Assembly: GCA_002104945.1 (NCBI GenBank)
Contig: MCFH01000018.1
Location: 124,001-188,000 of the forward strand
From: Piromyces finnis finn
Lineage: Eukaryota > Fungi > Neocallimastigomycota
Length of the DNA stretch: 64,000 nucleotides
Direction: 5' to 3'
The translations under genes were made by a program, and so were the position numbers. Below the pieces are notes generated by a model. That model was not told where the DNA came from and did not search any database. It saw nothing but the letters and a program-made list of their open reading frames with translations. Each line of letters begins with the position of its first letter. The first letter of the stretch is position 1. Shown here piece after piece: positions 4,248 to 24,956 of the stretch.

Positions 4248-5443
4248 TTAAAATACTGTCATAATTATAGTTAAAACAGTGGTGATAAGAACAAAAATAA
4301 TTTCATATTTGTTATAATCTTTAACACCATTTTCTTTAATAGCATCTTCACTAGTTTTTTGAGTTCCTGAAATATGTTTGAAATCCTTATTTGTTGACCA
4401 AGTAAGCCAAACAATATTTAAAGCAGTAGAATCTTTGCTCCATTCACCAAAAGCCATAAAGAAAGCAGCATATTGGGCACCATTGTTATCAACCAATACG
4501 GCTGCAACTGTTTTTTCTGGGATATCGCTGTTTTCACTAAAGAATAATAATGGTTCAACACTGATGCCATTATTTTCATCAACAATAACAGCTGGGAAGT
4601 GATAAATACTAAATTAGAATAAAAAGTTTTAATCAGAATATTATATTAATGTAGGACTTTACTTTTTTATTAATTAAAACTATTAAATATTTACCCTTCA
4701 GTACTTAAATTAGAATTATTAATAGTCTCAGCTTCACTTATATCTTCTTGAGCAATAAGAATTTGTTTTTGTTGATATACTCTTTCTGCTTCTTCATCCT
4801 TATATTCTTTATAAACTCTTGTTGAAGTATAATTACTTGGATATTCATTTAAAAAAACTAAACGTGAGCTGTAATTTCTTGAATAATCATAAAAATATTC
4901 CCATTGATCATAGGTAAGAGCACTTTGCCAATTACTTCCTGATTGTGATTCAGCATGATTATAACTTACACGTCCATTTGGGAATACTATAACTTTATAT
5001 TTTGCTGCTTTTTCTCCATTTGATAAAGTACAATAAATTTGCTTGTCTAATTCTTCATTACTTACACCAGATTTTGGAATCTTAAAAACATTATATGGAA
5101 TCTGTTTTAAACAATTTAAATAGTTTAGTATTCGTTAAATTTTTTAAATTTGTTATTTTTGTTTAAAATTAAAATGTAAAAGTAAGAAGAAGAATAAAAA
5201 AAAATAAATTTATTTAAATTATGAAAATACTCTTTTTTTTAATAATATATATTTATTACATATTAAATTTAAATATATTACATCATATTGTTTAAAAGTC
5301 TTGATAGCAGAAGCATAATCATTTGAGGAATCATTTTCAATAGTAATTACTAAAAAATCAGATGTAACATCTTCACAAAATGCTACCAAAGGTAACATTA
5401 ACAAAATAGCTAATTGAACAATTGATTTACAATTCATTTTCAT
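4248..5443 (-). CDS. Secreted, probably GPI-anchored stand-alone CBM87-like (Agd3 N-terminal domain) protein, paralog A; 2 introns
   Basis: Spliced product has a signal peptide, then FPNGRVSY, WQSALTYDQWEYFYDYSRNYSSRLVFLNEYPS, STEG|IYHFPA, TVAAV, AFFMAFGEWS and WLTWST, matching the Aspergillus Agd3 N-terminal domain as recalled. It ends in a hydrophobic tail. Confidence 0.8.
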
Positions 5444-6558
5444 TTATGTATATAAATTTCTATTTTTTCTTTCTTCTTTTTCTTTTTTGCTTCTTTCCTC
5501 TGTTCTTATCTTAATTTATAATATATTTATATATATTATAATTAATATTTTTAAGATGACACCAACTTTTTTTTTCTAATTTAAAAAAAAAAAAAGGTTT
5601 TTATTATCTTTTTAATAATATTTAATAATATTAATAATTATGATAATAATATTAATATCAAATAATAAAAAAATAAAAAGGAAATAAATTAAAAAATAGG
5701 GGTTTATTTATTAAGAAATATATAAATATAAATAAATTTAATGAAAATAAAGTCCATTACCAAATCCACATTTTTTCTGTTAAATTTTAATAGATATAAA
5801 ATAAACTAATTTTAATATTTTTATTAATTTAATTATATTAAATGTTTGAAAATAATTCATCTACTTTTAAAAATTAATCCAATAAAATGTAAGCATTTAT
5901 AATTTTAAATTAAAAAAAAGTAATTTTAATAAATATTAAAATTAATTATTTTTATGACATTCTTATTAAAAATTAAATGAATAAAGGGATGATGATGATG
6001 AATAATTAATACATCATTTATTTTGGATAGCATAAAGATAAAGATATAAGTATTAATGTGTGTTAATAATACTTTTTAACTTTATATAAAAAATTGAAAA
6101 AAAAGACATTTATAAGGAAAAAGAAAATAATATAATTCTAGTTATTTTCCATTATAAATATACAACAAAATTGGAATAAACAGTAAAAAGTTTTACTTAT
6201 TTTAAAAAAAAAATTCCATATTAAATTGTCATTTGATTAATGAAAAAACAAATTAGTATTTTAAATTTAATTTACATGATAAATTGAAAATTCATATTAA
6301 AAATTAAAAGAATAATGTATATAAATTAATTAATAAAAAAAGTTAAGAATATAAAATGAATGAAATGACAATTGAATGATAATATATTTTTCATATATAA
6401 TTGACTTTTATTTTTTATTTCTCTAAAATAATATTTTAATACATATATATAATAAATCTTTAAATATAATAATTTTAAATAATTTATATTAAAAAAAAAT
6501 TATTAAATTTATATATTGTATAATACGATTATTATTATGTTTTTTTCTTTTATTACTT

Positions 6559-8166
6559 TCATAAAAGATTAATAAAAATTGCAAGTATAGTGAAAATGAT
6601 AATAAAATTGCATTCACTTTTTCCATATTTTCTTAAGCCACTACTTTCGCTGTCATAACTATTTTCTTCTATAGCTTCTTTTGTTGTAACCTTTTTATTA
6701 GATGTATATTTTAAGTCTTTCTGTGTTGCCCATGTAAGCCATACAATATTTAATGCAGTTGATGTTGAACTCCATTCACCTTTATATATATAATGTGTAT
6801 TTTAAAAATTATTATTATGATGATGATGATGATGATGTTTATATTCTTAATTTTTCTTCTTACCAAAAGCCATAAAAAATGCTACATAGAGAGCACCATT
6901 ATTATTAACCGTAACTGCTGCAACTGTTTTTTCTGGGTAATTAAGAGTTTCGCCAAAGTATAAAAGTGGTTCAGCTGTAACTCCGTTACCATAGTCCACT
7001 ATCTTTGCTGGAAAATGATATATACTATTAACATAACAAATATTTAGATAACATTTATGTATAAACAAAATTGGATTCAAAGAATATATATATTAAGTAT
7101 AATAGTAATATTTATTATGTATATTGAATATCGGATGTTTATATATAAATATTAATTGAATGAATTATTTAATAATATTAATAAAGAATCTTTTTTTATT
7201 TATTTATTTATTTATAGTATATATAATATGTACCCAGATGTAGTTAATATTGAATTATTTATAGTTTCTTCTTCAGTAATTCCCTTTTCCGCAATAATTC
7301 TTTGTTTTAATTGATAATTAATTTTTGCTTCTTCTTCATTAAATTCACGATATAAAGAAGTTGAAGTATAATTACTTGGATATTCATTTAAGAAAACTAA
7401 ACGAGCACCATATGATCTAGAATAATCATAAAATAATTCCCATTGATCATATCTAAGAGCACTTTGCCAATCACTTTGAGATGTTTGTGAATAGTCTGCA
7501 TGATCATAACTAATTCTTCCATTTGGAAAAACTAAAACCTTATATTTTGGTATTTTCGAACCCGTATTACTAATGGTAAAAAGGTTATTTTCTAATTCTT
7601 CATTACTAATACCTCCTTGTGAAATAGAAATAACATTATATGGAATCTAAAATTTTATGTATTTATTTATTAAAAGATAATGAAATAATAAGAATATCAA
7701 TTATAAATTGAAAAATTACTTATTTATGTAATTTTTATAGTATTTTTAGTATTGTTATAATAATTCATTATATAGAACTTTAAATAAAAGTTGTTATCAT
7801 TAAATTATTATATATATATATACATTTGTTTTTCAATAATTGATATCTAATACTAATTACATTATTATATTCATATTTTTTATAACTTGTTTTATCATCT
7901 CAGTCATTCATATAACTTTATTAATATTTTCATGATAAAAAAATTTTTTCTTAAAAATATTTATTAAAATATTGAATATTTATTATTTATTAATAGATTA
8001 TTACTTCATATTTTATAAAAGTTTGCATTGCTGATGCATAATCCCCTGTATTTCCATTACTTTCTGTTGTTAAAACTAGAATTTCAGATGGATCATCATT
8101 TTTACCATAGATAATTAATGGTAATGTCAATAGTATTGAAAAATGAAAAATTGACTTTAAATTCAT
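6559..8166 (-). CDS. CBM87-like GPI-anchored protein, paralog B; 3 introns
   Basis: ATG at 8166 (MNLKSIFHFSILLTLPLIIYG). Motifs FPNGRISY, WQSALRYDQWELFYDYSRSYGARLVFLNEYPS, YHFPAKI, AFFMAF|GEWS. Hydrophobic tail IIFTILAIFINLL, TGA at 6559-6561. Confidence 0.8.
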
Positions 8167-8456
8167 TTTGTTTTGTATTTATTATTATTGTAAAATACTC
8201 TATATATGATAATGACAATTATTATTACTATATGATTGTTTAATTATTAGTAGTAGTATTTCTATATAAATTATTTTATATTATATTCCCATTTAGTTCA
8301 GGATTTATCACAAAAAAAGCTGATACTAATTATTATTAATAATTCTTTTTATTGTTTTTGTTTTATAAAACAAAATAAAAAATATAATTATATTATAATT
8401 TTTTAATAATTTAGATTAAAAATGAAAGAGAGAATATTATCTCTTAGATTTGTTTT

Positions 8457-8491
<35 letters not shown>

Positions 8492-9473
8492 TTATTTATT
8501 AATTTTATTTAATATTTTTATAATCTTGGTTTATAATGAGTATATATAAAACTTTTTCTAATTCATTACTAAATTCATATAATTAAACTTTTTTAAACTT
8601 TTACATATAATATAAATAATAGGATGTTTTGATAATTAAAAAGATATTCCTGATATATTATTGGAATAATTAATTATTTAATCTATAGTTAATGAACAAA
8701 TGAAATAGAAAATTAAAAGTGTTTAACTCCATCGTACCCATTTTAAATAAAATTATTTCAAAAAGAAAAATAATAATTAAAATTTGGTAAAAATTTTTAA
8801 ATAATAAAATTGACATTTTTTTTTTTTAGCTAAAGTTTAAATATTTTCTTTTTTTAAAAAATATATATAAAATATATATAAAAACAAAATATTACAATTT
8901 TAATTGGTTTGTTAATCCTCATATAACAGCATTTCAATAATAATCAAACGATTAATTAACTTTATTTAAAAAATAATAATAACAATAAATGCAGCAATAT
9001 TATTTACAATAATAATAAATAAAATTTTAAACAAAAAAAAAGAGAGACAAACTTTAACTATTAATATTTCTCTAAGATAATTATAAAAAATGTTTATTTA
9101 AATTTAAAAGTTTCAGATTTTGATCTTACATCCATTTTATAGCTTAATATGATAGTTATTGGTTACCATTAATTAACTCTTTAAACATTTATTATGATCA
9201 ATAAAACAGACATTTAAATAAAAATTAGAAGGTCATTATATGTAGCTAAATATACTTTTAATACTTTTAACAAGGTAATCATTTCATATGCTGACAATAT
9301 CAAGTGATGGTAAATAACTCTGGGAATGCCTTATAAAAAATAACAATAACAGTTATACAACTTAAATTTTTAGAAGATATATATACATGTATATTTTATG
9401 CTAATAACTCATATTATTCTAAATTTATAAGAAATTTTCGAATATCAAGAAACTCTTATTTTAAAAATTTTTT

Positions 9474-9632
9474 AATAATAGCTTTACTTTATTACTGATT
9501 TAATAAAGTTTCTTTTGTAAAAAAAAAAAAAAAAAAAAAAGATTTTTTCAATAATAGCTTTACTTTATTACTGATTTAATAAAGTTTCTTTTGTAAAAAA
9601 AAAAAAAAAAAAAAAAAAAGATTTTTTCAATA
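9474..9632 (+). repeat. Tandem duplication of a ~76-79 bp unit containing AATAAA and a poly(A) run
   Basis: AATAATAGCTTTACTTTATTACTGATTTAATAAAGTTTCTTTTGT-(A)n-GATTTTTTC occurs twice, with A22 and A25. Confidence 0.85.
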
Positions 9633-9795
9633 AAAAAAAAGTAAGTGAGAAACTTTAATAATATTAAAAAAAATTGTTATTTCCTTTTTTTTAATAATAA
9701 AAACTTCCTAAAAAAAAATGAAATAAAATAATTGAATCATTTATACTAACACATCCACATCCACATTCTATTATTATTATGATTTGCTTTATAAT

Positions 9796-9933
<138 letters not shown>

Positions 9934-10849
9934 ATTATTTATTTATTATTATTTATTTTACTATAGCATTTTTAAAAAAAATCTTTTTAAAAAATATACT
10001 TTTTTATATAAAATAATAAAATATTTTATAATAATTGCCTTAATAGCAATTTTAATAGTAGCATAATAGGATATTTTCATATATATTGTTATATGATATC
10101 TTGTGTTTTTGTTTTAATATCATTTTTATATAAAATATAACATTATTATAATAACAATTATATTTTAATATCATTAATAAAAAAAAAAAGATAGTATTGC
10201 TTATACCTATACTTTAAATTTAATTAATCAGTTCATAATATAAATTTAATCTTCAAAAAAAAAAAAAAAAAAAAAAAAAAGTAGAGAAATTTTATATCAT
10301 GAACCTTAATCCTTTTATATATTATTATTATTATTATTATAAGATTTATTATTTGAATATGAAAATAATTTATAAATCATTTTTATATCAAATAAATAAA
10401 TTTATATTTTTTTGATATATATATATATCATAATAGAATTATACTTTTTCTATTCCTATTCATAAAAATTTTATTTATTTTTATATGGAATAGACGTTAT
10501 TATTGATTTTTCTTTTTACGATTATATATATATATTACATCAATTATGGTTATTATTATTATTATCATTTTTTTGTCTTTGCTAGAAAAGATACTCCTCT
10601 TTTTTGAGAGTGGATTTTGACCCCCTTTTTCGAACATCAGCTACTCTTATTTTTTTGTATATTATTGTACTATTTATTATTAAATTTAGTGATTTTTTTT
10701 TCATTTGTTTGTTTTGTTAATATAATTAGTATTGTTATTGTAGTTGCTTTTTTTTTAAAAAAAAATTAAATTTGTTACTTTTGTTTTTATTTTACTTTTA
10801 AAAAAAATAATAATATATTTTTTGTTTCCTATTTTTCATTTATTTATAT

Positions 10850-12039
10850 TTATAATAAATAAAAAAAGGTAAGTAATGATGAAAGAGTAATAAAAAGTAT
10901 TCCTAATTTTCTATTTCTTTCTGCATCAGAAGAAATATTATTTTTAACATTTAATAAAGCTTGTTCTGTTGTAACATCTTGAGTTGAAGATAAATCTTTT
11001 AAGTCCATTTCAGTAGCCCAACTTAACCATAATATATTTAATGCATGAGATGTCTTGCTCCATCCACCAAAAGCCATGAAATAGGCAGCATATTTAGCAC
11101 CAGCATTATTAACTGAAACAGCTGCAATAGTTTTTTCAGGGAGAACATCATTTTCATTAAAGTATAATAATGGCTCAGCAAAAACAGTTTCAGTATTTTG
11201 AAGTTTAGCAGGGAAATGATAAATACTATTTCATTATTTATGATTATACGTAATATAAAAAAATATTTTAATTCATTTGTTTTATACTTATTTTAAATAT
11301 TTGTATTTGCAATACAAAAAAAAAAAAAATTAAATATATCTCATATAATAGATATATAATTGTTTATAAGTAGGTGACATACTTATTAGTATCTAAATTA
11401 GCGGAATTAATAGCTTCAGCTCCGGTAGTTCCAGGAGCTGCAGAAATTTTTTGTAGTGAAGTAAATATGTTATTATTATCATTATCACTGTATAACATTG
11501 TAGCGGTATAATTGCTTGGATATTCATTTAAAAATACTAAACGAGAACCAAATGATCTTGAATATTGATATATTTCTTCCCATTGAAGAGGTTTTATAGC
11601 ACTTGTCCATATATCGTCATCATTATAACTAATTCTACCATTTGGGAATACAATAGCTTTATATTTTGCATTACCATTATCATCATAGAGAGCATTATGA
11701 AGGTCTTCATCTAAAATACCTGATTTTTTAATTTTAATTCTATGTCTATTAATCTATTTTCATTTTAATATAAATAATAATTAAAGAATAATATATATTC
11801 AACAGTTAATATGTTTTTTTTTTTTTTTTTTTTTAATATTATAATATTTATAATATATATTTTTAATTCTATCTTACGGAATATTTTTCCATAGTTTCAA
11901 GAATAGAATTTGTAGCTAAATCTTCGCTTTCATTATCATCAGTAGTAACAATTAAAATATTTTTATTTAATTGTTGACATATTACAGAAGCTGAACCAAA
12001 TAATATTAATGATAACTTTGAAAATAATTTGAAATACAT
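10850..12039 (-). CDS. CBM87-like GPI-anchored protein, paralog C; 2 introns
   Basis: ATG at 12039 (MYFKLFSKLSLILFGSASVIC). Motifs FPNGRISY, WTSAIKPLQWEEIYQYSRSFGSRLVFLNEYPS, YHFPAK, MAFGGWS, WLSWAT, then a hydrophobic tail. Confidence 0.8.
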
Positions 12040-13741
12040 TTTTTTAAAAAAAATATAAGTATCTATTATAAACAAATAAACAATTTATTGATTTTTATTG
12101 TTTTTTTTTTTTTTATTTATTATTTATAACTTTTGAACAAACTTTTATTTTTATGTTTGTTTGCTTTTTATAATAATCTATATTTTTTCTTTTTTTTTTA
12201 TTTTTTTTTTTTTAGATTTTTAAAATCTAAGTTATTTTATTAATTATTTATATTTTGTAAATCTTTCTTTTTAAGATGTTCAAAATCAAATTTAATTAAT
12301 TACAGAAAAAAAGCTTAATAATTATAATAATTTTTGAAGTACAAAAATAAAAAAAAACGAATAATTTAATTTAATGAATAAATAAATATAATTATAAATA
12401 AATAATATATTATAATAAATGAATATATATAATTAAAAAATAAATAATATGATTCATAATTAATTTTTAATATAAAATATTAATATATACTTTAAAAAAA
12501 AAATAATATACCTAAATTTATACATTTATTAATATTTTATATTCATTATACTAAATCACAACGAAGACGAAACTATTAGTTTTTCATTTAAAAATAGTTT
12601 TTACGAATGAATAATATTAGCACTTAAATACATAGTTTTATATAAAAGCATATTAAAATTAAAAATAATAATAAACCATTTATATTTATATATCAATAAA
12701 ATTGGAATTGCACTAAAAAAAGATAATTAAAACATTTTATATGTTTTATATGTTTTATTAAAAAAAAAAAATTTAAATATGTAAATAAATTATAATTCGG
12801 TTTTTAATATATAAAAGTTTCAAGATATAAAAAAAAAAAAAAAAAGTACAAATAAGTACAAAATTTCTCATCATAATAAAAGAAACTATTGTATATTATT
12901 AATATATATATAACATAAAGGAAAAAAAGAAATAATATACAAAACATTTCATTAAAGATTTTTTATTATTATTATTTATTTACTTTATTTTATTTTCCTT
13001 GTTAACTTTATTATTATTATCGCTTTAATGGAAACGTTAGTCTCATTATAAAATTTAATTAAAAGAAACTTCTATAAATCAAAATAACATACTTTTAAAA
13101 GATTAAAGTTAATAGAAAAACAATATTAATTGCTTCATAGTTAAATTAATAAAAAAAAAAAAAAAAAACTTTATTATTAATAATAATTTGATAAGCAAGA
13201 AATATAATTATATAATTACTAGAGTTAAAATTAAATATTAATAAAATTAAAAAAAAAAAATAAATATACACAATATATTTCTTCTAATATCTTGTTACTC
13301 CTATTATTGTTAAAATGTTTATTACTTTTATATATTTCTATATACAAAATAGAATTAATTACTATAAACAAATATAACAATTTTATAACATGCAAAAATT
13401 CAATACCTATAATTATATAAGTAGTAAAGAAAACCTTTTAATAAAAATTATGTATTAACATGAAATTGCACAAATTATTAATTTTATATAATACAAGAAG
13501 AATTGTTATTTTATTGTTTTGCCTTATAAATATTTTTTTTTATTTATTTATTTTATCATTATTATTACTTTTAATTGTATCTTTAATTGTTTTTATTTTC
13601 TTGCTGATAATTTACAATTTTGTTTAATTGCACTTGTACATATTGAATGTCTTATTTTCATTTTGTTTCAATTTTAACAAAATTTAAAAATTTTACAAGA
13701 ATATACTAATTGTTGTTGATAATAACTTAATATCTTATAAC

Positions 13742-13897
13742 TTAAACATCAACCTTGCTCTTCCAAAGACCATCATTGAGATAATGAATAGTTTCAATAC
13801 CAATATCCTTGTTAATCTTACGACTATAATATAAAATAAAATATAAAATGAATTATTAATATTTTCAAATTTAGTATATTATTTAAAAGAAATAACA

Positions 13898-13928
<31 letters not shown>

Positions 13929-15482
13929 TACTGGTAATCTATTTCTATTATATCATTTATTTCATAACTTAATAAAATAGAAATAATAATTCTATAATCA
14001 TATTTATATTGAAATTATCTTCATGAAAAAAAGTGGAAATCTATAATTGAATTAATTAGAATAATATACATGCTTTCATTTCTTTTCATAACTATTAGTA
14101 ACAAAAATATATTATTGAAAAATTGAATCTTATAATAGTATTTATTATTATCCTAATAATTATAAAGTTTATGATTAAATGTTTTAAAATCTAATTTTTA
14201 TTTCGTTGTTTAAATTTTAATATTTCTATATCAATTTTAATAATGTTTTTAATGTACATATATCTATGTTTTTAAAACCAATATTGTTTTTAAACTTTTA
14301 ATAAATTTCATATTTATATTTTGATATTTTTATAATTCCTATATTTTCTTAGTATTTTGGTGTGATTTTCTTTTTAATTCATTAATTTTTGAATTATTTT
14401 TTTTATTATTTTTTTCCTTTTAAAAAAAAAATAAAATTAAAATTAAATAGAATATATATAAAAAAAATATAATTACATATCATCAGTAGAAAGTTTAGTA
14501 ACACCAACAGCAATAGCATGTTGTTTTCCTTCACAGAAAATAGCTACGATTGAATCAGCTGGAAGAGATTCATCCATTCTAGCACCTGGTGAAGTAAGAC
14601 CTGGACACATAATATTAGCACCTGATAAAATAAATTTAATAGCACCTCTATCAACTTGAACCTTTGGCATCATATCAGGATCTTATTAAATATAATTAAT
14701 TTGTAATATACAATAATTATTGTTGTGTTTTATTAATAATTATAAATACATTAACATTAAAATTAATGTGATTTTGATAATCAAAATATTGTTAAATATT
14801 ATTATATTGTTAAATATAATTTTATTTTTAATAATAAAAAAATATTAGCAAGTGTTTTTAATTTAAGACATTCTTAATTATATATAAAAAATATAAAAAT
14901 TGTTACATTTATGTAATAATCTAAGACTTGGGTAGTATGGACCATCATAACTGTTAAAGAATAAAATTTCATTATTCATTGAAATTAAAGTAATTCTTTC
15001 ATGACTTTTTATAAATAAAGATAAATAATATGTAAGAAATTAGAAATGAATATTTTAAAATTTTCCTTTTTTTCTTATCATGTATATGTATATAAATTCG
15101 AGATTTGAATTTCTTTTTTTGAAATAAAGAAACGATAAAAAAAAAATATTGATATTATTTATTTATTTATTAATTAATTAATATTCTTTATATACCATTT
15201 AATTTGAATTAAAGGTGTCTTTTTTGGCATAACTTCATCAATTACAGGAGTTAATTTTGGATATTGTTCTAAAATTTTAGCACGAATGGATCTTTGAACT
15301 GATGATTTTACTTGAGAATGACCATTAACATTCTCACTATAGGAAAATCTATAATTATTAAAATTTAATATTAATATACATGGCTTTATTATCGTTGTTG
15401 AATTTTAAAAAATAATTATATTTAAGCATAATAATTGTATTTTTATTATTTATTGAAATGATTGATCTTACTTCTTGAACAT
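13742..15482 (-). CDS. TMA20: MCTS1/Tma20 PUA-domain translation re-initiation factor; 4 introns
   Basis: Spliced MFKK|FSYSENV...QIKC|HERITL...PSLRLLHK|[33 protein letters not shown]...|[22 protein letters not shown] closely matches MCT-1. Confidence 0.93.
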
Positions 15483-16276
15483 TTTATATTCTCTTTTATA
15501 TAATAAAATATATAATATAATATTTTTAAAGTTTATAATTTAATAAATAAAAAAACTATAAGAAATATAAAATATGATTGGATAAATTATCTTAATAATC
15601 ATCTTTATAATAAAATTTTTGAGGATTAGATTAAAATATTTCATTCTTTACTTTCTATACTTTTAAAAGTTATTTAAATAAAAAAGATGTTGTTAATCAA
15701 TCAGTACTTAAATAATAAATATACCTGAAGAATGATAAATATATTTAATTTTATTTTTTAAATTATTTAATATTTATACAAAAGCAAATATAACATTAAA
15801 CTTTAAGAATAATACTGTTTAAATTTTTTTAACCATTTTTAATAATATTTTTATAAAATATTTACTCTTTCATTGTTATTTTCTGTTAAATTTTATCCTT
15901 TCTTTATATTATTTTTTTGATTTTTGTGTACTAAAATTGTATGCCTATTTTATTTTATTAATTAAATATTTATATATAATGACATAATGAATGAAAAAGA
16001 AAGAAAGAAAATAAATATCAATGGTTTTAATAATTGAAATTCGAATAACTCTTGAATGAAGGTATATGTTAATTAATAAAGCAAAAAGAATAAAAGCTTT
16101 CTTTTTCTTCTTTTTAATATATATAGAACTATAATATATTTGCCATTTTTATAAATATTGATATGATAAAGTTAGAATATTATTAATAATCTATATCTTT
16201 TCATTTTTAATTACTTTTATATATATATTTTTTTTAAAAAACTTTGATTTCAATTCTCTATCTTTTTCCTTCTTTC

Positions 16277-16280
<4 letters not shown>

Positions 16281-16333
<53 letters not shown>
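16281..16333. repeat. (AAT)n microsatellite
   Basis: Direct reading. Confidence 0.95.
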
Positions 16334-16335
<2 letters not shown>

Positions 16336-16933
16336 TAGAAAAAAGTTTTATTTTTTTTTTTAAAAAATTATAAATTAAAATTTTGTAATTAATTTTTATT
16401 ATTTAATTATTCCATTATAAGGTTGTTATCCCATCAAAAGAAAATTTCTCATTTTATTTTTAATATAATTATAACACCTCACCACCATCAATTATATTTC
16501 GTATTTTAAATGTAAAGACTTTTTTTATATATTAATAAACATGTGGTTTATGCTAACCCACTACTCATACTTTTATATAGATTAATTATATAAATATTTA
16601 AATCAATTTTAGTAATATAATATGATCATTAATAAAAAGTAATATCATTTACAATATATATATATATATAATAATATTTACAGCTTTCTATTTTTTTTTC
16701 ATTTATTAAATTTCTTTTTGTTTTTTTCATTTATAAATCAACTTGATTATAATACCTTCTTTTTAAATGATTAATACTCTTTAATATATATGCCAATTAG
16801 TATTAGCAATTAGTATATTCTTTAGTTTTATATAAAAGAATAACATATATTTTTTTCTCATTATGAAAGTTAGAATTTCCTTTCATTATTTCAAGTAAAA
16901 GTTTTGTATTGTGTTACTTTTTATTTTGAGAGG

Positions 16934-17420
16934 TTTTTTTTTTTTTTTAACTTCCGAGTGCATTTCTCCTATCAATCAGAGTAAGCCCCAATGATGGTTC
17001 TTAGAAAAACGTTGGCTCTTTCCTACTAAGTGGTCTGTCATACTAAATCTTCAGCTTCGACTTAATCAATGTACATTAGATACTTATCGTTGTATTATAT
17101 TATTATATTTCTTACTATAACGCTAAGCCTCATATGGCCAATTTGGTCACGTGTCAACATCCCTAATGTGTAAACTTACATTAATTAAGAAATGCTGCTT
17201 GTGTATATAGCATAGCCTAAGCCACTGCTTATAAAGTTTTAATTTGAAAATGTACCATTTACACTTTGACCCTCTCGGCTAGACGAGTGTTAATATTATA
17301 GAAGTAAATTAGAAAGTGCATTAATACTTACCTAAATATCATAACCTAACTCATGGCAAAACCCAATTGGAAAATCCACGGACACCTGCAGGGTCGAACT
17401 AGAAGCCTTCATTATGAGTG
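16934..17420. other. Unassigned GC-richer non-coding island next to a T15 run; candidate retroposon remnant or ncRNA
   Basis: Sharp compositional contrast with the flanks and no long ORF. T15 at 16934-16948 would be a poly(A) tail on -. B-box-like GTTCGACCC on - at 17391-17399. Confidence 0.45.
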
Positions 17421-19273
17421 AATAAATAAATATATAATCATGTGCTTTTTTTTTATAGTGATGATTTCTTGAAAATTTATGGTGATTTTATACATTATAT
17501 TATCACTACAAATTAACAAAAATTTAATACAAAAACTAATAAATTAAAAAAAATTAATATAATTTATTGTATACATCATTAAAATAAAACCATAATTTAT
17601 TAATTGTATGTTTTTTTAATATATTTACTATTTATTTATTTATTGTTTAATTTTAAAATAGTTATTTCTTAATAATCAAAATCTAAGTAATATTATTTGT
17701 TACTGTATTATAATATATAATTCAACTATTTTTTTTATAGAAAGGAAATCAGGGAAATTAAATAATTTATTATATATTACTAATTACTTCATATTTCTTT
17801 AATTCTTATTGTTAAGCCAATTATTATTAAAATTTATCCGTAAAGTGGCTAATTAAAGATGATATATATTAATTATTATAAAAATAAGATTTATATTTAA
17901 AATATTATTTATTTAAAGCATCATTTAATTTTATATTATTATTTATTTTCTTATATAACTAAGCTAGGTTGTACTACAAAGTCTCCCTTTAAATTTTTGT
18001 TGTTGTTTAATTAAGGAATGAATTAATTTCTTTATGTATTAAAGTTTTTAATTTTTTTTTACCATAAATTTAGGAGGGATAAAAATTTAATTATTACTAA
18101 TTTCTTCTTAGATAAAAAAAATAAAGTTTCATCCATGATTAAATTTTTATTAATTTTTAAAGTTTAATTTATTAAAATACATTATCAAAATGTATAATAA
18201 TAAATTATTAATATATTTCAGAGTATAATTAGGTATTGTAATACTATATATAACTTTTAATATCATTTTATTAATTATTATGTTATTTTATAATGTTTTT
18301 TTATATAGAATAATTTAATTTCAAATACTAAAATATTATATATTCATACTTTCCTTTTCTATATATTATTTTTTTGTTGTGATTTGTTTTACAATTTATA
18401 TATAATCTAATAAATTATAGAATATAATATAATATATTATCTTATTTATTAATCTATTATAGGTGAAAATTCTAAAAGATAAAAATTTTTACATACAAAT
18501 TAAAAATTAGATGAAAAAAAAGGCTATTGATAGTGCTATGTTTTAACCACAAACTCTAATGAAGGGTGTATAGATTTATAATTCATCATATATTATAAAT
18601 ATATAGCAATAAAAATGACCACATGTTCATTGGTCTATTATTGTTTTAAAAACAAGATTTATTATAATATTCCTTGTTAAGAATGTTATTACTATAATCG
18701 ATAATGCTTAAAAATATACAGAATGATGATTTTTTTTGAAAATTAAAAATATTAGATGCCCTTAATTATTAATATATTTTTATTTTTAATTTTTTAATTT
18801 TATTATTAAATAGCTTATTGAGAATTTAAAGATATGTAATATGTAATTATAACTAAATAAAAACATTTATTTATTATGAATAAAAATGATAATAAAAATA
18901 TTTATTATAATATATATTATATTATATTCTAAAATTAAATTAATTTAGAAATAAAAGTAATTTATTAATTGTTCATTGGATAATTCTAAAATAGTGATAA
19001 TAAATTAAGATTATAACAGCAATATAATTTATTTATATTGAATTATAGAATAGATATTTAATTTAAATATAATGATTTATATATTATAATTTTATTTTGA
19101 AGAATATATATAAAAGGATAAAAATTCTTTTTTTTTAATATTAATTATTTATAATATAAATAATAAAAAAAGTATTGTTATTGTTGTGTATTATATTGGA
19201 AAAATTATAATTTTTCAAAAAAAAAAAAAAAACAAATTAATTATTAATTAAAAAATTAAAGATAATTGACAAA

Positions 19274-20307
19274 ATGCAATTCAAATCACTTTTAATGTCT
19301 GCTTTATTATTTACTGCACCAATTTTTGCAGAAACTGATTGTACAGATGCCAAAAATATGGATTCTGACAAGTGTAAGGCTGATATTTTAATTGTTACCA
19401 CCCAAAATTTAGATGCTTTCCAAAATGAAGGTTACAATTCTGTTGTAAACACTCTTACTAAATTCAGTGTAAGTAAAATGATTAAAAAAAAAAACTTATA
19501 GAATATGAAAATTGCAATTATTAATAAATAAATAAAAATTTACAGGTTCCAGCCAACAAACTTTCCATTGATCCAAATGGTGTTGATACTACTTACATTA
19601 GAAATGTTCTTTACCGTAATAATGATGAAGGTAGATACAAGGCTATTGTTTTCCCAAATGGTCGTGTTTCTTACAACAGTGGTGGTGATCAATGGGTTTC
19701 TGCTATTAGACCAGACCAATGGTTACTTTTCGATGAATACTCTGCCGTTACTGGTAGTCGTATTGTTTACTTAAATGAATACCCAAGTAACAACACTGCT
19801 ACTGAATTAGCTTACGATTTCAAAGGTGATCAAGCTTCTAACTTCAAAATTGCTCAAAAAATATCTTTCCCAGAAGATTCTTCTTCATTCATTGAAGATC
19901 TTAAGGATATTGAACTTAACACCCAAGACACATGGCATTTCCCAGCTAAAATTGAAGATGAAAGTAAGTACAAGGTAGATGGATTTGATTCTGTTGAACC
20001 ACTCTTATACTTCGAATCAGCTGGAGAAACCATTCCAGAAAAGACTATTGCTGCTGTTGCTTGTGAAAGACAAGGTTCTATATACGCTGGTTTCTTCACT
20101 AGTTTTGGTTCTTGGAGTAAAACTGCTGCTGCCTTAAATATCTACTGGCTTACCTGGGCTCTTAATACTGATTTCTCTAAGATTTCTGATGCCCACATTT
20201 CAACTGAAAAGGCTCTTGATATGTCTTCTGATGCTCCAAAATCAATTAAATTAGCTTTATTATCACTTGTTGTTTCTACTCTTCTTGTTATTTTCGTTAC
20301 TTTCTAA
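19274..20307 (+). CDS. CBM87-like GPI-anchored protein, paralog D; 1 intron (19469-19545)
   Basis: Signal peptide MQFKSLLMSALLFTAPIFA. Motifs FPNGRVSY, WVSAIRPDQW, RIVYLNEYPS, WHFPAKI, TIAAV, FGSWS, WLTWAL. Omega-like SSDA followed by a hydrophobic tail; TAA at 20305-20307. Confidence 0.85.
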
Positions 20308-20648: not shown

Positions 20649-23600
20649 ATGAATAAGGAGGTTTTTGAAAAGTGTACAATCTCCAATTTTTTTTTTTTTT
20701 TAATGGTTTATGGAGTATACATTTATTATGGCTCAGCTCGTAGTAGAAGGAATCACAAATACACTTTTTCCACTCTCAAACGTAAAATTTTAGTTTCTAA
20801 TAAACATCAACATTCTATTCAACAATCATTTCAACAATCAGTTCAACAATCTCATCAACAATCCGATCTTCAACTAGATCTTCAACAAGATCTTCAACAA
20901 GTTTCCAATCATGAAAATATTCCAGATCTACAGCAAACACAATTTCAATCTCAACATTCAACAATTAATTCTAATAGCTCTATCAACTCTGATAACAGTT
21001 CAATAGTTGATAGTTCTTCAGTTTCACAGCCATCTAGTAATAGTTCTACTTATTCCTCTGATGCATCATCCATTAATAACGATGACTTTAATAATAATAA
21101 TAATAGCAACGATTCTTCCTCATCCAACAAGCCTGATAACTTTTCTTTTTGTCTTAGTTGGAACACCAATGGGTGGAATCACGAAAAGAGAGATAGTATT
21201 AGCTATTTCACAGCTATTTTCAAACCATTATTTTTATGTTTCCAAGAAACTGGTAATGGTTCTGGTTCGAATACAGATTATCCTTGTCGTGTTACTTTGC
21301 GAAACTATAGACACTTTTTCAAGAAAGCTGACGAATCAGTTCCGGGAATGAGAGGTTTATATTTAGGTTTTCACAATTCGTGTCAAGCCTCACTTGAAAA
21401 CTTCTCTGGAAAGTATATTATTTCTATTTATACTTTTAGTCTCTGGAATAGATTCAAATGCTCGATTGGTAATGTTTATATGCCTCATAGTCATCACAAC
21501 ATCTATGTTGATCATGCAAAGTTAGAAGTTCGCTTGTGGTTACAAACTCATTCATCCCATCCATCGATTCTTGTTGGTGATTTTAATATGTCTAAAGTAA
21601 AATTATCCAACTGGTTATCAACTAATGGATTAGGAGATTGGGAAATTCTTCCGCTTAGAGGGTCTACTATCTCTTGGACTCGAGGTGATCAATCTTCCGA
21701 CATTGACCATGCTCTTATCAATTCGAAGATGAAAGATCTTATTCACTCAGGATCATTTATAAATAATTTTTATCCTGTATCAGACCATAAGCCACTTCTT
21801 ATTAATGGTAAAATTATTCCTATGGATGATTTTTCTAATGACTTTAATGTTCCTAAGAAAATTCTGAAATGGAATAGATTAAAATGTATTGAGGAAAAGG
21901 AATCTATTATCAGTCATAATAAATTCCAAATACTTTCAGCAAAATTCAACGATCCTAATGTTTCTACAGATGAACTTTCCAAAGAGTTTACTTCAACTGC
22001 TTTTTCAATTGCAGACGAGCTCAGTATTACCTCAGCAAATAATGTTATAAAGTCTTCATTTCATATTTCACAACAAATTTTTAATCTTCAAAAAATCAAA
22101 ATGAAGTTGTATAAGAGATTTAAAAAAGAAAGAATTTATGATATAGATGAATTTATTAAAAGAATTAAAATCTACCGTAAGCTCATTGATTACATCCACA
22201 AAAGATGTAATGAATTTAGGAAGCAAGAATATCTTCATTGGATTAAAACAGGATGTGAGTATATGAAGAGTCATAATCCTAAGAAGGCCTGGAAATGGAT
22301 CAAGAAAACTGCAAAAATAGGAAAAGATTCTTTCTTTATTGCTCAACCAATTAAAAATAAAAATGGAGAATTAGTTGTTGCTACAGAAGAACAACTAGAA
22401 GTGTGGCATGATCATTTCGAAAACCTTGCATCAGATCCAAGTGGTGTAAGTCTTGATTTGGAGCATTGGTATGAAGAACCAATGAATAAACGTTTTTCAC
22501 TTCCTATGCTTGATGAGTGGGATATCAACCAAGATATTAGTATTGATGAAGTCAAGTCAGCTATCCTCTCTACTCCAAATTATAAAGCATCAGGTCCGGA
22601 TGGTATTCCAATTGAATTTTACAAAGCATTAATTCCATCAAGTAATGATTCTAATAATGCTACAGATAATAATTCTTCCGGTAATACTACTTCAGATAAT
22701 GATGCTCATGGTTTAAATTTTATTCTTAAATTATTCAACCGTATTTGGGATGGAGACTTCCCCAACTCATGGAATGAATCCAGTATTGTTTCTATTCCTA
22801 AGAAGGGAGATTTGACAGATTGTGATAACTATCGAGGTATATCACTTATCAATAATGGCATTAAGTTGATTTCCAAAATTGTCACCACTAGAATCTCAGA
22901 AAATGGTCTAAAGAATAATTTCATTAGACCTGAACAATTTGGTTTTCGAAAAAAGGAAGAAAGTATCAGTCTTTTCATTTCAATCCAAGAAATATGCCGT
23001 AGACGTCAATTAGATAATAAAGAGACATATTTGGCCTTTTTAGATCTCAGGAAAGCATACGATTCAGTCCCAATCGGTAATATTCTCCATAAATTAGATT
23101 GTTTAGGAATCCGAGGTAAGAGTTTACAATTCATCAAAAATTTATATTTAACATCTAAGGCTAATGTCAAATTAGATGGACAATTCTCGAAATCTTTTGA
23201 TGTGAAGAAAGGAGTCCGTCAAGGATGCCCTCTTTCTCCTATTCTCTTTAATCTCTTTATTAATGATATATTTAAAGAGTGTGAAGATCTCGGAGTCAGT
23301 TTAGGTGACACTCGATGCTGTGGTGGACTTTTTGCAGATGATATAGTTATTTGTGCTCCAACAAGAGAATACTTAAAAAAGATGCTTAGAAGAGTTAATG
23401 AATGGGCCTTGTATAATGAAATGGAATTTGATATCCAGAAATGTTCAACGATGGTGATTCGTCCTGAATCAATAGAAAATCAGAACAAGAGAGATCCAAC
23501 ATTTTACTTAGCAGGACAACCCATTCCAACTACTGATTGCTATACTTATCTTGGTGTTCCATTTGATAAGAATCTGTCCTTTAAACCAGTAATTAAAGCT

Positions 23601-24956
23601 CTTAATAACAAGGTTTTGAAAGGGCTTTTCTCAGTCAGTAAATTCTTAAGAAATCCTAATATTCCTATTCCTTTCAAAAAACTAGTACTTAACTCACAAG
23701 TGATTAGCAGAGTTTCATACTTTGCACCATTACTTGGATCCAACAAAGCTAGGTCTAGGATTGCTCAGAAGCATGTTAACAAAGGAATACGATGGATTGC
23801 CGGAGTTCATAAAGCTGTATCGTTTATATCTTTATACTCTATCTCAAAAGATTTGAATATTCCTCCATTGTCAGCCAAATGTGCATTAGCTCAGGTTAGA
23901 TGTTTTAACAAATGGAAAAACTCAAATTGTATTATCTCACACCTTGTCAATTACATTCCTAAATTTAGAAAATACACGTGGTGCAAATCAAGTAGGACAC
24001 TTGATAAAAAATTAAAGAAACATGGAGATGTTAAAGCAGTTAAAAACTTTTATTGGAAAGATCTCAAAGGGAATTCAATCAAAGCGCAATATTATGATGA
24101 TAATAAATTTATTGAAACTAAAGATTTTATTAAATTATGTTATGAGTACCCAGAGTTTGCCTATGGCTTCTACTGGCTATTGAAAGCAAGAAGCGGATAC
24201 AAGTTGGATGCTAGAGTTGCCAAAGCTGCCAAATTTGTTGATCCAGTTTGTCCTAACTACTGTCCATGTTGCAAGTGTGGAGATCAAAGTATTAAACATT
24301 GGTTATTAGATTGTCCAACATTTAGAGATATCCGTATTAAACATTATGATTCTATAGTCCATCTTTTAAATTTTTTCAGTCAACGTAATTCCAATAGTCC
24401 TATCAATAATAATGAAATTGATAATATCAGTAGAGATAGCAATAACAGTAATAGTAATAGTAACAATAGTAATAATAACAATAGTAGTAATAGTAATAAT
24501 AGAAATAGTAATAATAACAATAGTAGTAATAGAAATAATAATATTAGTAATGATAGCAATAGTGATGATAATAATTCTAATTTAGATAGTAATTTAGTTA
24601 ATGATAGTAATAGTTCTAATAATCCGGTGAATATTAATGTGTATGATTATTCTAGTGTGTGCAGTAAAATATTTAAATTCCTTCTTGGGGGAAGAAGTTT
24701 TAACAATATCAATTACAATTCAAGGGAATGGAAAGAACTTTGTAAGCGTCAGATTCAATCTAGTACTAATGAAGGAACACCATTCTTGACTGTAACCGCG
24801 GAACTTCTAACCAAAATCATGCCTTTTGCTATTGGCCAGCAATGGTCAATGTTCAAAAGGTTTGAAGCAACATCCAAGAGCGTCAATGCTGAAGAAACAG
24901 TAAGACAGGCCAGGAGGGCCAGCGCAACCAATGGAGATCATAATTTTGTTCCATGA
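20649..24956 (+). CDS. APE endonuclease - reverse transcriptase - CCHC zinc-finger polyprotein
   Basis: APE motifs WNTNG, FQET, GDFN, SDIDH, SDHKP. RT motifs GPDGIP, NYRGISL, FLDLRKAYDSV, GVRQGCPLSP, FADD, YLG. C-terminal CPCCKCGDQSIKHWLLDC. Confidence 0.95.
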   Translation: MNKEVFEKCTISNFFFFLMVYGVYIYYGSARSRRNHKYTFSTLKRKILVSNKHQHSIQQSFQQSVQQSHQQSDLQLDLQQDLQQVSNHENIPDLQQTQFQSQHSTINSNSSINSDNSSIVDSSSVSQPSSNSSTYSSDASSINNDDFNNNNNSNDSSSSNKPDNFSFCLSWNTNGWNHEKRDSISYFTAIFKPLFLCFQETGNGSGSNTDYPCRVTLRNYRHFFKKADESVPGMRGLYLGFHNSCQASLENFSGKYIISIYTFSLWNRFKCSIGNVYMPHSHHNIYVDHAKLEVRLWLQTHSSHPSILVGDFNMSKVKLSNWLSTNGLGDWEILPLRGSTISWTRGDQSSDIDHALINSKMKDLIHSGSFINNFYPVSDHKPLLINGKIIPMDDFSNDFNVPKKILKWNRLKCIEEKESIISHNKFQILSAKFNDPNVSTDELSKEFTSTAFSIADELSITSANNVIKSSFHISQQIFNLQKIKMKLYKRFKKERIYDIDEFIKRIKIYRKLIDYIHKRCNEFRKQEYLHWIKTGCEYMKSHNPKKAWKWIKKTAKIGKDSFFIAQPIKNKNGELVVATEEQLEVWHDHFENLASDPSGVSLDLEHWYEEPMNKRFSLPMLDEWDINQDISIDEVKSAILSTPNYKASGPDGIPIEFYKALIPSSNDSNNATDNNSSGNTTSDNDAHGLNFILKLFNRIWDGDFPNSWNESSIVSIPKKGDLTDCDNYRGISLINNGIKLISKIVTTRISENGLKNNFIRPEQFGFRKKEESISLFISIQEICRRRQLDNKETYLAFLDLRKAYDSVPIGNILHKLDCLGIRGKSLQFIKNLYLTSKANVKLDGQFSKSFDVKKGVRQGCPLSPILFNLFINDIFKECEDLGVSLGDTRCCGGLFADDIVICAPTREYLKKMLRRVNEWALYNEMEFDIQKCSTMVIRPESIENQNKRDPTFYLAGQPIPTTDCYTYLGVPFDKNLSFKPVIKALNNKVLKGLFSVSKFLRNPNIPIPFKKLVLNSQVISRVSYFAPLLGSNKARSRIAQKHVNKGIRWIAGVHKAVSFISLYSISKDLNIPPLSAKCALAQVRCFNKWKNSNCIISHLVNYIPKFRKYTWCKSSRTLDKKLKKHGDVKAVKNFYWKDLKGNSIKAQYYDDNKFIETKDFIKLCYEYPEFAYGFYWLLKARSGYKLDARVAKAAKFVDPVCPNYCPCCKCGDQSIKHWLLDCPTFRDIRIKHYDSIVHLLNFFSQRNSNSPINNNEIDNISRDSNNSNSNSNNSNNNNSSNSNNRNSNNNNSSNRNNNISNDSNSDDNNSNLDSNLVNDSNSSNNPVNINVYDYSSVCSKIFKFLLGGRSFNNINYNSREWKELCKRQIQSSTNEGTPFLTVTAELLTKIMPFAIGQQWSMFKRFEATSKSVNAEETVRQARRASATNGDHNFVP

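What the first reader, a model, noticed from the sequence alone, without database searches (positions are those of the whole stretch)
4248..20307. Cluster of four stand-alone, membrane-anchored CBM87-like proteins with no deacetylase domain
All four spliced products follow the N-terminal carbohydrate-binding module of Aspergillus fumigatus Agd3 motif by motif (QSALxxDQW, YPS/YPG, STEGxxHF/YPA, TxAAV, FFxxFxxWS, WLTW). Homology stops where Agd3 enters its CE18 deacetylase domain; a short spacer and a hydrophobic GPI-type tail follow instead. Established: CBM87 of Agd3 binds the GalN/GalNAc exopolysaccharide galactosaminogalactan. Inference: this is an expanded family of enzyme-free surface lectins/adhesins in a gut fungus, possibly anchoring matrix polysaccharide or binding plant or partner-microbe surfaces. 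I do not recall this architecture being described. Best candidate for a new system in this window.
Basis: partly seen in the sequence, partly recalled or inferred. Interest (0 to 1): 0.75.

Follow-up and report, generated by a model that had tools for sequence, protein, structure and literature searches.

The report
Anchored stand-alone CBM87 sugar-binding proteins
Four neighbouring genes of the rumen fungus Piromyces finnis each encode only the sugar-binding module of the biofilm enzyme Agd3, with a secretion signal and a membrane-anchor tail. They belong to an unstudied family found across anaerobic gut fungi and probably hold a matrix polysaccharide at the cell surface.

Summary
Window 4248-20307 (Piromyces finnis MCFH01000018.1) holds exactly four intact, intron-bearing paralogues of 302-318 aa.

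- **Architecture:** each has a signal peptide, a complete CBM87 domain, a spacer of about 28 aa, and an uncharged hydrophobic tail of 17-18 aa that ends the protein.
- **Sequence match:** every large exon hits Pfam PF25116 (E 1e-8 to 1e-27). A family profile aligns to Agd3 residues 148-360 (E 2e-21), which stops at the CE18 boundary.
- **Fold match:** an AlphaFold model of gene A (pLDDT 86.6) matches Agd3 at Z 23.1; the next best match is Z 14.7.
- **No catalytic domain:** no CE18 coding exists anywhere in the 64 kb window.
- **Transcripts:** spliced transcript contigs of the Anaeromyces and Neocallimastix orthologues end in a 3'UTR straight after the tail.
- **Binding positions:** the three Agd3 GAG-binding positions read N, W/Y and W.
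- **Phylogeny:** the family is phylum-wide (Piromyces, Anaeromyces, Neocallimastix) and forms one clade (support 100). That clade is separate from the dockerin- or CBM1-bearing CBM87-CE18 enzymes of anaerobic fungi. A similar architecture arose independently in chytrids.

GPI anchoring and the ligand are inferred, not shown. The genes are already annotated as hypothetical proteins, but I found no paper describing this architecture. I could not obtain read-level RNA evidence for P. finnis. I rate it a new variant of a known kind, of moderate interest.

The parts
4248..5443 (-). Gene A. Exons 5443-5282, 5101-4695 and 4608-4248 (stop 4250-4248); 309 aa. Signal peptide lies in exon 1, CBM87 spans exons 1-3, hydrophobic tail is at 4301-4251.
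   Evidence: The spliced product equals P0014 (BCR36DRAFT_325511). Pfam PF25116 hits the exons at 78.9 and 58.1 bits. The AF2 model has pLDDT 86.6. Its top PDB match is Agd3 6nwz at Foldseek E 1.1e-16 and Z 23.1.
6559..8166 (-). Gene B. Exons 8166-8005, 7646-7234, 7024-6864 and 6779-6559; 318 aa. It has an extra 84-nt intron inside the 'AFG|EWS' motif. Hydrophobic tail is at 6612-6562.
   Evidence: All introns are GT-AG and the model stays in frame. PF25116 scores 57.0 and 35.3 bits on exons 2 and 3. Its exons are 46-58% identical to gene A. NCBI calls a 318-aa PF25116 gene with the same span.
10850..12039 (-). Gene C. Exons 12039-11878, 11753-11383 and 11225-10850; 302 aa. Hydrophobic tail is at 10906-10853, preceded by an S-D-A omega-like site.
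   Evidence: All introns are GT-AG and the model stays in frame. PF25116 scores 57.2 and 49.7 bits. NCBI calls a 302-aa PF25116 gene with the same span.
19274..20307 (+). Gene D. Exons 19274-19468 and 19546-20307; 318 aa. Hydrophobic tail is at 20251-20304, preceded by an S-D-A omega-like site.
   Evidence: PF25116 scores 97.6 bits, E 1.2e-27. The exon hits Agd3 in the PDB at E 2.9e-8. It is 99% identical to P0001 (BCR36DRAFT_287885). That NCBI model starts at an internal Met; the ATG at 19274 restores a signal peptide homologous to the N-termini of relatives.
5102..5281 (-). Intron 1 of gene A. It is phase 0 and sits before the 'IPYN' motif. The same position is used in B, C, D and in the A. 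robustus orthologue.
   Evidence: A. robustus transcript contig L005 maps to genome locus L003 in three blocks, with its two introns at the same two positions as in A-C.

Best explanation
The region holds four old tandem or neighbouring duplicates of one gene. They are 40-58% identical to each other. Each gene makes a small secreted protein that is a complete CBM87 module and nothing else. CBM87 is the alpha/beta/alpha carbohydrate-binding domain of the galactosaminogalactan deacetylase Agd3. The module is tethered to the outer face of the plasma membrane or cell wall by its C-terminus, most likely through a GPI anchor added in exchange for the terminal hydrophobic peptide.

The protein cannot deacetylate anything. 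I infer that it works as a surface lectin, using the conserved aromatic cleft to hold a GalN/GalNAc-type (or related amino-sugar) polymer at the cell surface. The polymer could be the fungus's own matrix or a polymer from neighbouring microbes.

Shown: the gene structures, the domain identity and fold, the absence of a catalytic domain, the family's distribution, and expression of the orthologues.
Inferred: GPI attachment, sugar binding, the ligand, and any adhesion or matrix role.
For: - **Domain identity:** Pfam PF25116 hits every large exon. The family profile matches Agd3 at E 2.2e-21 over residues 148-360.
- **Fold:** the AF2 model has pLDDT 86.6. Agd3 is its top match by Foldseek (E 1.1e-16, 29% identity) and by VIA-align (Z 23.1, rmsd 2.8 A over 220 residues; next best Z 14.7).
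- **Binding positions:** Agd3 D242, W292 and W344 affect GAG binding (PMC7229062). In 23 family members these positions read N 23/23, W14/Y5/H3/F1, and W 23/23. That falls within the variation seen in catalytic long forms.
- **No catalytic domain:** tblastn with nine CE18 regions finds nothing in the window (best E 0.23).
- **Transcripts end after the tail:** contigs L004 and L005 (A. robustus) and L008 and L009 (N. californiae) encode the exact annotated proteins without introns, followed by a 3'UTR of 140-460 nt.
- **Anchor signal:** each protein has an N-terminal signal peptide and an uncharged hydrophobic terminus of 17-18 aa (16-25 aa across the family) with no residues after it. A small-residue triplet (S-D-A, S-S-G, S-G-A, S-A-A or N-D-A) lies 6-12 residues upstream in most members.
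- **Selection:** the family forms one clade (SH-aLRT 100) spanning Piromyces, Anaeromyces and Neocallimastix, with conserved intron positions.
- **Context:** anaerobic fungi carry 8-21 CE18 modules, 9-26 CBM87 modules and abundant GH114 genes (PMC12586995; PMC6054980).
Against: - No binding data exist for any member of this family.
- D242 is replaced by N in every member, and W292 by Y in A, B and C.
- I could not run a GPI predictor. Gene A's omega region (N-G-V or D-Y-N) is poor.
- It is not established that anaerobic fungi make galactosaminogalactan. I did not survey synthase (Gtb3), Uge3 or Sph3 homologues.
- The CBM87-CE18 enzymes of anaerobic fungi carry dockerins or CBM1. Their substrate may therefore lie at the plant or biofilm interface and need not be a GalN polymer.
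- Read-level RNA evidence for the P. finnis genes themselves could not be obtained. Only an indirect word share of 0.18-0.41 in runs of guessed RNA type is available.
Confidence: 0.6

Rival explanations
1. The architecture is the same, but the tail is a plain C-terminal transmembrane anchor (type I, with no cytosolic residues), or it is simply cleaved or degraded. It is not a GPI attachment signal.
For: Gene A lacks a good small-residue omega triplet. More distant CBM87-only proteins use true transmembrane segments with cytosolic tails: P0096 from Syssomonas, and P0132. I could not run a GPI predictor.
Against: All 22 family members end exactly with the hydrophobic run. Most have an S/N-D/G/A-A/G triplet 6-12 residues before it. 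That combination, together with a signal peptide, is the classical GPI signal (established knowledge).
Confidence: 0.2
2. The domain no longer acts as a lectin. It could be a non-catalytic partner or regulator of the secreted CE18/GH114 enzymes, or a structural surface protein using the GATase1/ThuA-like fold for something other than glycan binding.
For: The clade sits on a long stem branch of 0.86, which points to a shift in constraint. D242 is replaced by N throughout. The same fold occurs in many non-lectin proteins at Z 12-15.
Against: The two cleft tryptophan positions stay aromatic, and W344 is invariant. N at the D242 position is also the commonest residue in catalytic long forms, at 19 of 61 domains.
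Confidence: 0.15
3. The four genes are truncated relics or gene-model artefacts of CBM87-CE18 genes. Their catalytic exons have decayed or were missed.
For: A LINE-like element lies directly downstream of gene D. The deposited model for D is mis-started.
Against: All four reading frames are intact with canonical splice sites. No CE18 remnant exists in the 64 kb window. The 293-327 aa architecture, tail included, is conserved across three genera and about ten 50%-identity clusters. Orthologue mRNAs end after the tail.
Confidence: 0.02

Closest known systems
Aspergillus fumigatus Agd3 (CBM87-CE18-C-terminal domain; PDB 6NWZ; PMC7229062)
   Same: The N-terminal CBM87 module is homologous over its full length, residues 148-360. 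Identity is about 30%, Z is 23.1, and the alpha/beta/alpha fold is the same. The cleft positions W292 and W344 stay aromatic. Both proteins are secreted.
   Different: The window proteins have no CE18 deacetylase domain and no C-terminal beta-sandwich. They carry a C-terminal hydrophobic anchor signal instead. D242 is N. The lineage is different (Neocallimastigomycota rather than Pezizomycotina), and no GAG gene cluster lies nearby.
CBM87-CE18 enzymes of anaerobic fungi (e.g. P0035, P0043, P0066)
   Same: They come from the same phylum and carry the same CBM87 module. They are the weakly supported neighbouring clade in the domain tree (SH-aLRT 81).
   Different: They keep the catalytic domain. 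They end in a dockerin (CBM10) or in CBM1 modules rather than a hydrophobic tail. They score 107 bits or less against the short-family profile, against 256-464 bits within the family.
CBM87-only, hydrophobic-tail proteins outside anaerobic gut fungi: Cladochytrium replicatum KAI8807491.1 (P0031) and two unnamed environmental proteins (P0039, P0046)
   Same: They have the same overall architecture: signal peptide, a single CBM87, a short Ser/Thr/Gly spacer and a hydrophobic C-terminus.
   Different: They lie in a different part of the CBM87 tree. Strongly supported branches force at least two origins of the architecture. They too are uncharacterised hypothetical proteins.
Plant PDCB proteins (X8/CBM43-only, GPI-anchored callose-binding proteins). 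This analogy is from my own knowledge and was not tested here.
   Same: The logic is the same: a carbohydrate-binding module otherwise attached to an enzyme exists alone, with a signal peptide and a GPI signal, and holds a wall polymer at the membrane.
   Different: The fold, ligand and kingdom are unrelated. This is an analogy only.

Membership tests
CBM87 (CAZy) / Pfam PF25116 CBM87_Agd3 | Sequence match to the family model above its curated threshold (27.6 bits) | tested here: met
   D scores 97.6 bits; A 78.9 and 58.1; B 57.0 and 35.3; C 57.2 and 49.7; the family profile matches Agd3 at E 2.2e-21.
CBM87 (CAZy) / Pfam PF25116 CBM87_Agd3 | Alpha/beta/alpha fold of Agd3 residues 141-364 | tested here: met
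   The AF2 model of gene A has pLDDT 86.6. 6nwz_A is the top match at Foldseek E 1.1e-16 and at Z 23.1, rmsd 2.8 A over 220 residues, well clear of the next match at Z 14.7. Only gene A's product was modelled.
CBM87 (CAZy) / Pfam PF25116 CBM87_Agd3 | Conserved cleft residues shown to affect GAG binding (D242, W292, W344) | tested here: inconclusive
   W344 is W in all four genes and in 23/23 family members. W292 is W in D and Y in A, B and C. D242 is N in all members, but N is also common in catalytic long forms.
CBM87 (CAZy) / Pfam PF25116 CBM87_Agd3 | Demonstrated binding of alpha-1,4-GalNAc/GalN oligosaccharides or GAG | not testable with these tools
   This needs recombinant protein and glycan assays.
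CE18 deacetylase (Agd3 proper) | Agd3_CE catalytic domain (PF25115) following the CBM | tested here: not met
   No PF25115 hit appears on any exon. The proteins end about 46 residues after the CBM. tblastn with nine CE18 regions finds nothing in the window.
GPI-anchored surface protein | N-terminal signal peptide plus a C-terminal uncharged hydrophobic stretch that ends the protein | tested here: met
   The same features hold in all 22 family members. This is by inspection only, with no dedicated predictor.
GPI-anchored surface protein | Omega site of small residues about 8-12 residues before the hydrophobic stretch | tested here: inconclusive
   S-D-A occurs in C and D and S-S-G in B. Gene A has only N-G-V or D-Y-N. 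No NetGPI, PredGPI or big-PI was available.
GPI-anchored surface protein | Experimental lipid anchoring (PI-PLC release, C-terminal processing) | not testable with these tools
   This is a wet-lab test only.

The most novel reading that the evidence does not exclude
The short anchored CBM87 proteins are the cell-surface receptor arm of a phylum-wide system for handling amino-sugar exopolysaccharides in anaerobic gut fungi. The other arms would be the expanded dockerin- or CBM1-bearing CE18 deacetylases and the abundant GH114 hydrolases. In this reading the proteins tether a GalN/GalNAc-rich matrix, either the fungus's own or a Pel-like polymer of rumen bacteria, to the thallus. They would thereby mediate attachment and biofilm or partner association on plant fibre.
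Probability: 0.2. Interest if true: 0.7.

Novelty: new variant of a known kind. Interest (0 to 1): 0.5.

Why it matters
CBM87 has been characterised only as an accessory module of one Aspergillus enzyme. This finding shows a conserved, expressed, phylum-wide family in which the module stands alone on the cell surface. The same architecture arose a second time in chytrids. It gives a concrete and cheap handle for asking three things: whether anaerobic gut fungi make or recognise a galactosaminogalactan- or Pel-like polymer; why CE18 and GH114 are so expanded in them; and how these fungi stick to fibre and to partner microbes. The domains are small and could be expressed as probes for such polymers in rumen samples.

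Tried and rejected
- **Read-level RNA evidence failed.** I sent those places to no search tool afterwards. As a substitute I used spliced transcript contigs of orthologues.
- **A wrong guess, corrected.** I first suspected that genes B and C were unannotated, because the word search returned only A and D. One search shows NCBI calls both with the same spans.
- **Origin of the tail.** I checked whether the hydrophobic tail was inherited from long forms of anaerobic fungi. It was not: those end in dockerin or CBM1 modules.
- **More copies or CE18 remnants.** I looked for further copies or CE18 remnants in the window and found none.
- **Literature.** Searches by locus tag and for 'GPI-anchored' plus Neocallimastigomycota found nothing relevant.
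- **ESM Atlas.** The feature search gave only weak leads, with scores of 0.83 or less. Its 225-aa Ascomycota 'CBM87 domain-containing' cluster was not followed up. It may consist of fragments, like the truncated Agd3 models seen.
- **Left out by the operators' rule.** These genes were searched exon by exon, by reference. Gene A was covered by the database protein P0014.
Full report
**What is there.** The window is extremely AT-rich, with 11-37% GC per kb. It comes from Piromyces finnis scaffold MCFH01000018.1, with window position 1 at record position 124001. Stop-free frame analysis and tblastn with family proteins find exactly four related genes between 4248 and 20307. I fixed the splice sites by reading the sequence around each exon end and checked them. 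All introns are GT-AG and all models stay in frame.
- A (-): 5443-5282 / 5101-4695 / 4608-4248, 309 aa.
- B (-): 8166-8005 / 7646-7234 / 7024-6864 / 6779-6559, 318 aa.
- C (-): 12039-11878 / 11753-11383 / 11225-10850, 302 aa.
- D (+): 19274-19468 / 19546-20307, 318 aa.

Gene A's product is identical to database protein P0014 (BCR36DRAFT_325511). NCBI calls B and C with the same spans and lengths. The deposited model for D (P0001, 290 aa) starts at an internal Met. The in-frame ATG at 19274 adds a signal peptide that matches the N-termini of relatives.

**Is it CBM87?** Yes. Every large exon passes the Pfam CBM87_Agd3 gathering score, with E from 1e-8 to 1e-27. A profile of 16 family members aligns to Agd3 chain positions 26-238, which are residues 148-360, at E 2.2e-21. 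The CBM87 module is residues 141-364 and the CE domain starts at residue 365 (PMC7229062). Homology therefore covers the whole module and stops at its border.

An AlphaFold2 model of gene A's product, built on the family alignment, has mean pLDDT 86.6. Its best PDB match is Agd3 by Foldseek (E 1.1e-16, 29% identity). VIA-align gives Z 23.1, rmsd 2.8 A over 220 residues. The next matches are the GATase1/ThuA-like folds, the N-terminal domain of NDST1 and the equivalent GH42 domain, at Z 12-15. This is the same set of structural neighbours reported for Agd3's CBM.

**Is there really no catalytic domain?** No exon hits the Agd3_CE model. tblastn with the CE18 regions of nine long relatives finds nothing in the whole 64 kb window, with a best E of 0.23. 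Each reading frame ends about 46 residues after the CBM.

Orthologues supply the transcript evidence instead. A. robustus protein P0016 is encoded without introns on contigs L004 and L005. L005 maps to the genome (L003) in three blocks, so two introns have been removed, and it continues 180 nt past the stop. N. californiae protein P0169 is likewise encoded on 1.6-kb intronless contigs. The two A. robustus introns sit at the same positions as introns 1 and 2 of A, B and C. The pseudogene or artefact reading is therefore rejected.

**The ends of the protein.** Each product starts with a typical signal peptide. Each ends with an uncharged hydrophobic run of 17-18 residues that is the very end of the protein. 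The same holds for all 22 family members. Upstream by 6-12 residues, most members have a small-residue triplet. C and D have S-D-A and B has S-S-G; other members have S-G-A, S-A-A or N-D-A. Gene A has only a poor candidate.

Taken together with the signal peptide, this is the classical GPI attachment signal (established knowledge). However, no GPI predictor was available and no experiment exists. I rate GPI anchoring at about 0.65 and a plain membrane anchor at about 0.2.

**Binding site.** Bamford et al. showed that D242, W292 and W344 of Agd3 contribute to GAG binding. They also showed that the isolated CBM binds alpha-1,4-GalNAc/GalN oligomers but not Gal oligomers (PMC7229062). In the short family the three positions read N (23/23), W/Y/H/F (14/5/3/1) and W (23/23). 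In the window genes D reads N-W-W, and A, B and C read N-Y-W. N is also the commonest residue at the first position among catalytic long forms. The cleft signature is therefore retained, which favours a carbohydrate-binding function. The ligand itself is inferred.

**Family and origin.** The word search found relatives of 272-327 aa in Piromyces sp. E2, A. robustus and many short contigs from metagenomes or transcriptomes. The exhaustive HMMER search found 213 proteins at E<=1e-3. The ten best 50%-identity clusters, at E<=1e-71, are all 293-320 aa and match the profile through the tail. After them, per-domain scores drop from 256-464 bits to 129 bits or less. One of these clusters contains proteins from N. 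californiae and N. lanati.

In a maximum-likelihood tree of 108 CBM87 domains, the 22 short anchored sequences form a single clade (SH-aLRT 100) on a long stem of 0.86. That clade is weakly grouped (SH-aLRT 81) with long forms from anaerobic fungi and with Gonapodya CBM87-CE18 proteins. This was a quick search with SH-aLRT support only. I left out P0008 (a fragment) and the duplicates P0164 and P0165.

The long forms from anaerobic fungi end in dockerin (CBM10) or CBM1 modules, not in hydrophobic tails. Other CBM87-only proteins with hydrophobic C-termini exist elsewhere: Cladochytrium replicatum KAI8807491.1 and two unnamed environmental proteins (P0039, P0046). A Syssomonas protein has a true transmembrane segment with a cytosolic tail. 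These lie in other parts of the tree, so the architecture arose more than once. Within P. finnis, D belongs to a different subclade from A, so the duplications are old.

**Context.** MycoCosm CAZy counts list 9-26 CBM87 modules against 8-21 CE18 modules per anaerobic-fungus genome, and 19 against 16 in P. finnis (PMC12586995). GH114, the Ega3/PelA-type family, is among the most abundant CAZy families expressed by these fungi. Its role there is acknowledged to be unknown (PMC6054980). Two unchecked first-reader notes of this scan report CE18 pairs and a GH114+CE18 neighbourhood elsewhere in the same genome.

None of the 15 papers that mention CBM87 describes a stand-alone anchored CBM87 protein. 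Searches by locus tag and for GPI plus Neocallimastigomycota found nothing relevant.

**Verdict.** The GPI anchor, the lectin activity and the GAG-type ligand are reasonable inferences that remain untested. The proteins are already in databases as hypothetical or auto-named 'Agd3 CBM87 domain-containing' proteins. This is therefore a new, uncharacterised architectural variant of a known module, not a new kind of system.

**Limits.**
- There is no read-level RNA evidence for the P. finnis genes.
- The joined spliced products of B, C and D were never used in any search or fold.
- Only gene A's product was modelled.

Noticed in passing
window 20649-24956 (+): A 1435-aa open reading frame with a reverse-transcriptase domain (RVT_1, E 3e-36) starts 340 nt downstream of gene D's stop. 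It looks like a LINE-type retroelement and appears intact.
   Followed up: partly
window 14476-15404 (-): A PUA/Pre-PUA (MCTS1-like) gene lies between genes C and D, so the four CBM87 genes are not strictly contiguous. NCBI calls a 182-aa product here.
   Followed up: partly
window 19274-19357: The deposited NCBI model for gene D (BCR36DRAFT_287885, 290 aa) starts at an internal Met and lacks the signal peptide. The upstream in-frame ATG at 19274 gives an N-terminus homologous to relatives.
   Followed up: yes
window 9463-9661 and 9797-9958: Between genes B and C lie a 76-79-nt tandem duplication containing poly(A) runs and a (TTAT)x41 microsatellite. The microsatellite blocked read laying.
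   Followed up: no
proteins P0035, P0043, P0066 (relatives, not in the window): Agd3-like CBM87-CE18 deacetylases of anaerobic fungi carry C-terminal dockerin (CBM10) or CBM1 modules. This suggests they are targeted to cellulosomes or cellulose, which would be unexpected for an enzyme thought to mature the fungus's own exopolysaccharide.
   Followed up: partly
proteins P0025, P0026, P0028, P0024, P0033 (chytrids and environmental contigs): Some proteins have two to four tandem CBM87 modules, a few with no CE18 at all (e.g. Blyttiomyces KAJ3304213.1 with three). The very long ones may be fused gene models.
   Followed up: no
   Followed up: no
L002 5557-6699 and window about 33400: In Piromyces sp. 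E2, a GH5 cellulase gene lies about 4.5 kb from the CBM87-only gene. The P. finnis window also holds a GH5 gene about 13 kb beyond gene D, according to a first-reader note. This may be conserved synteny.
   Followed up: no
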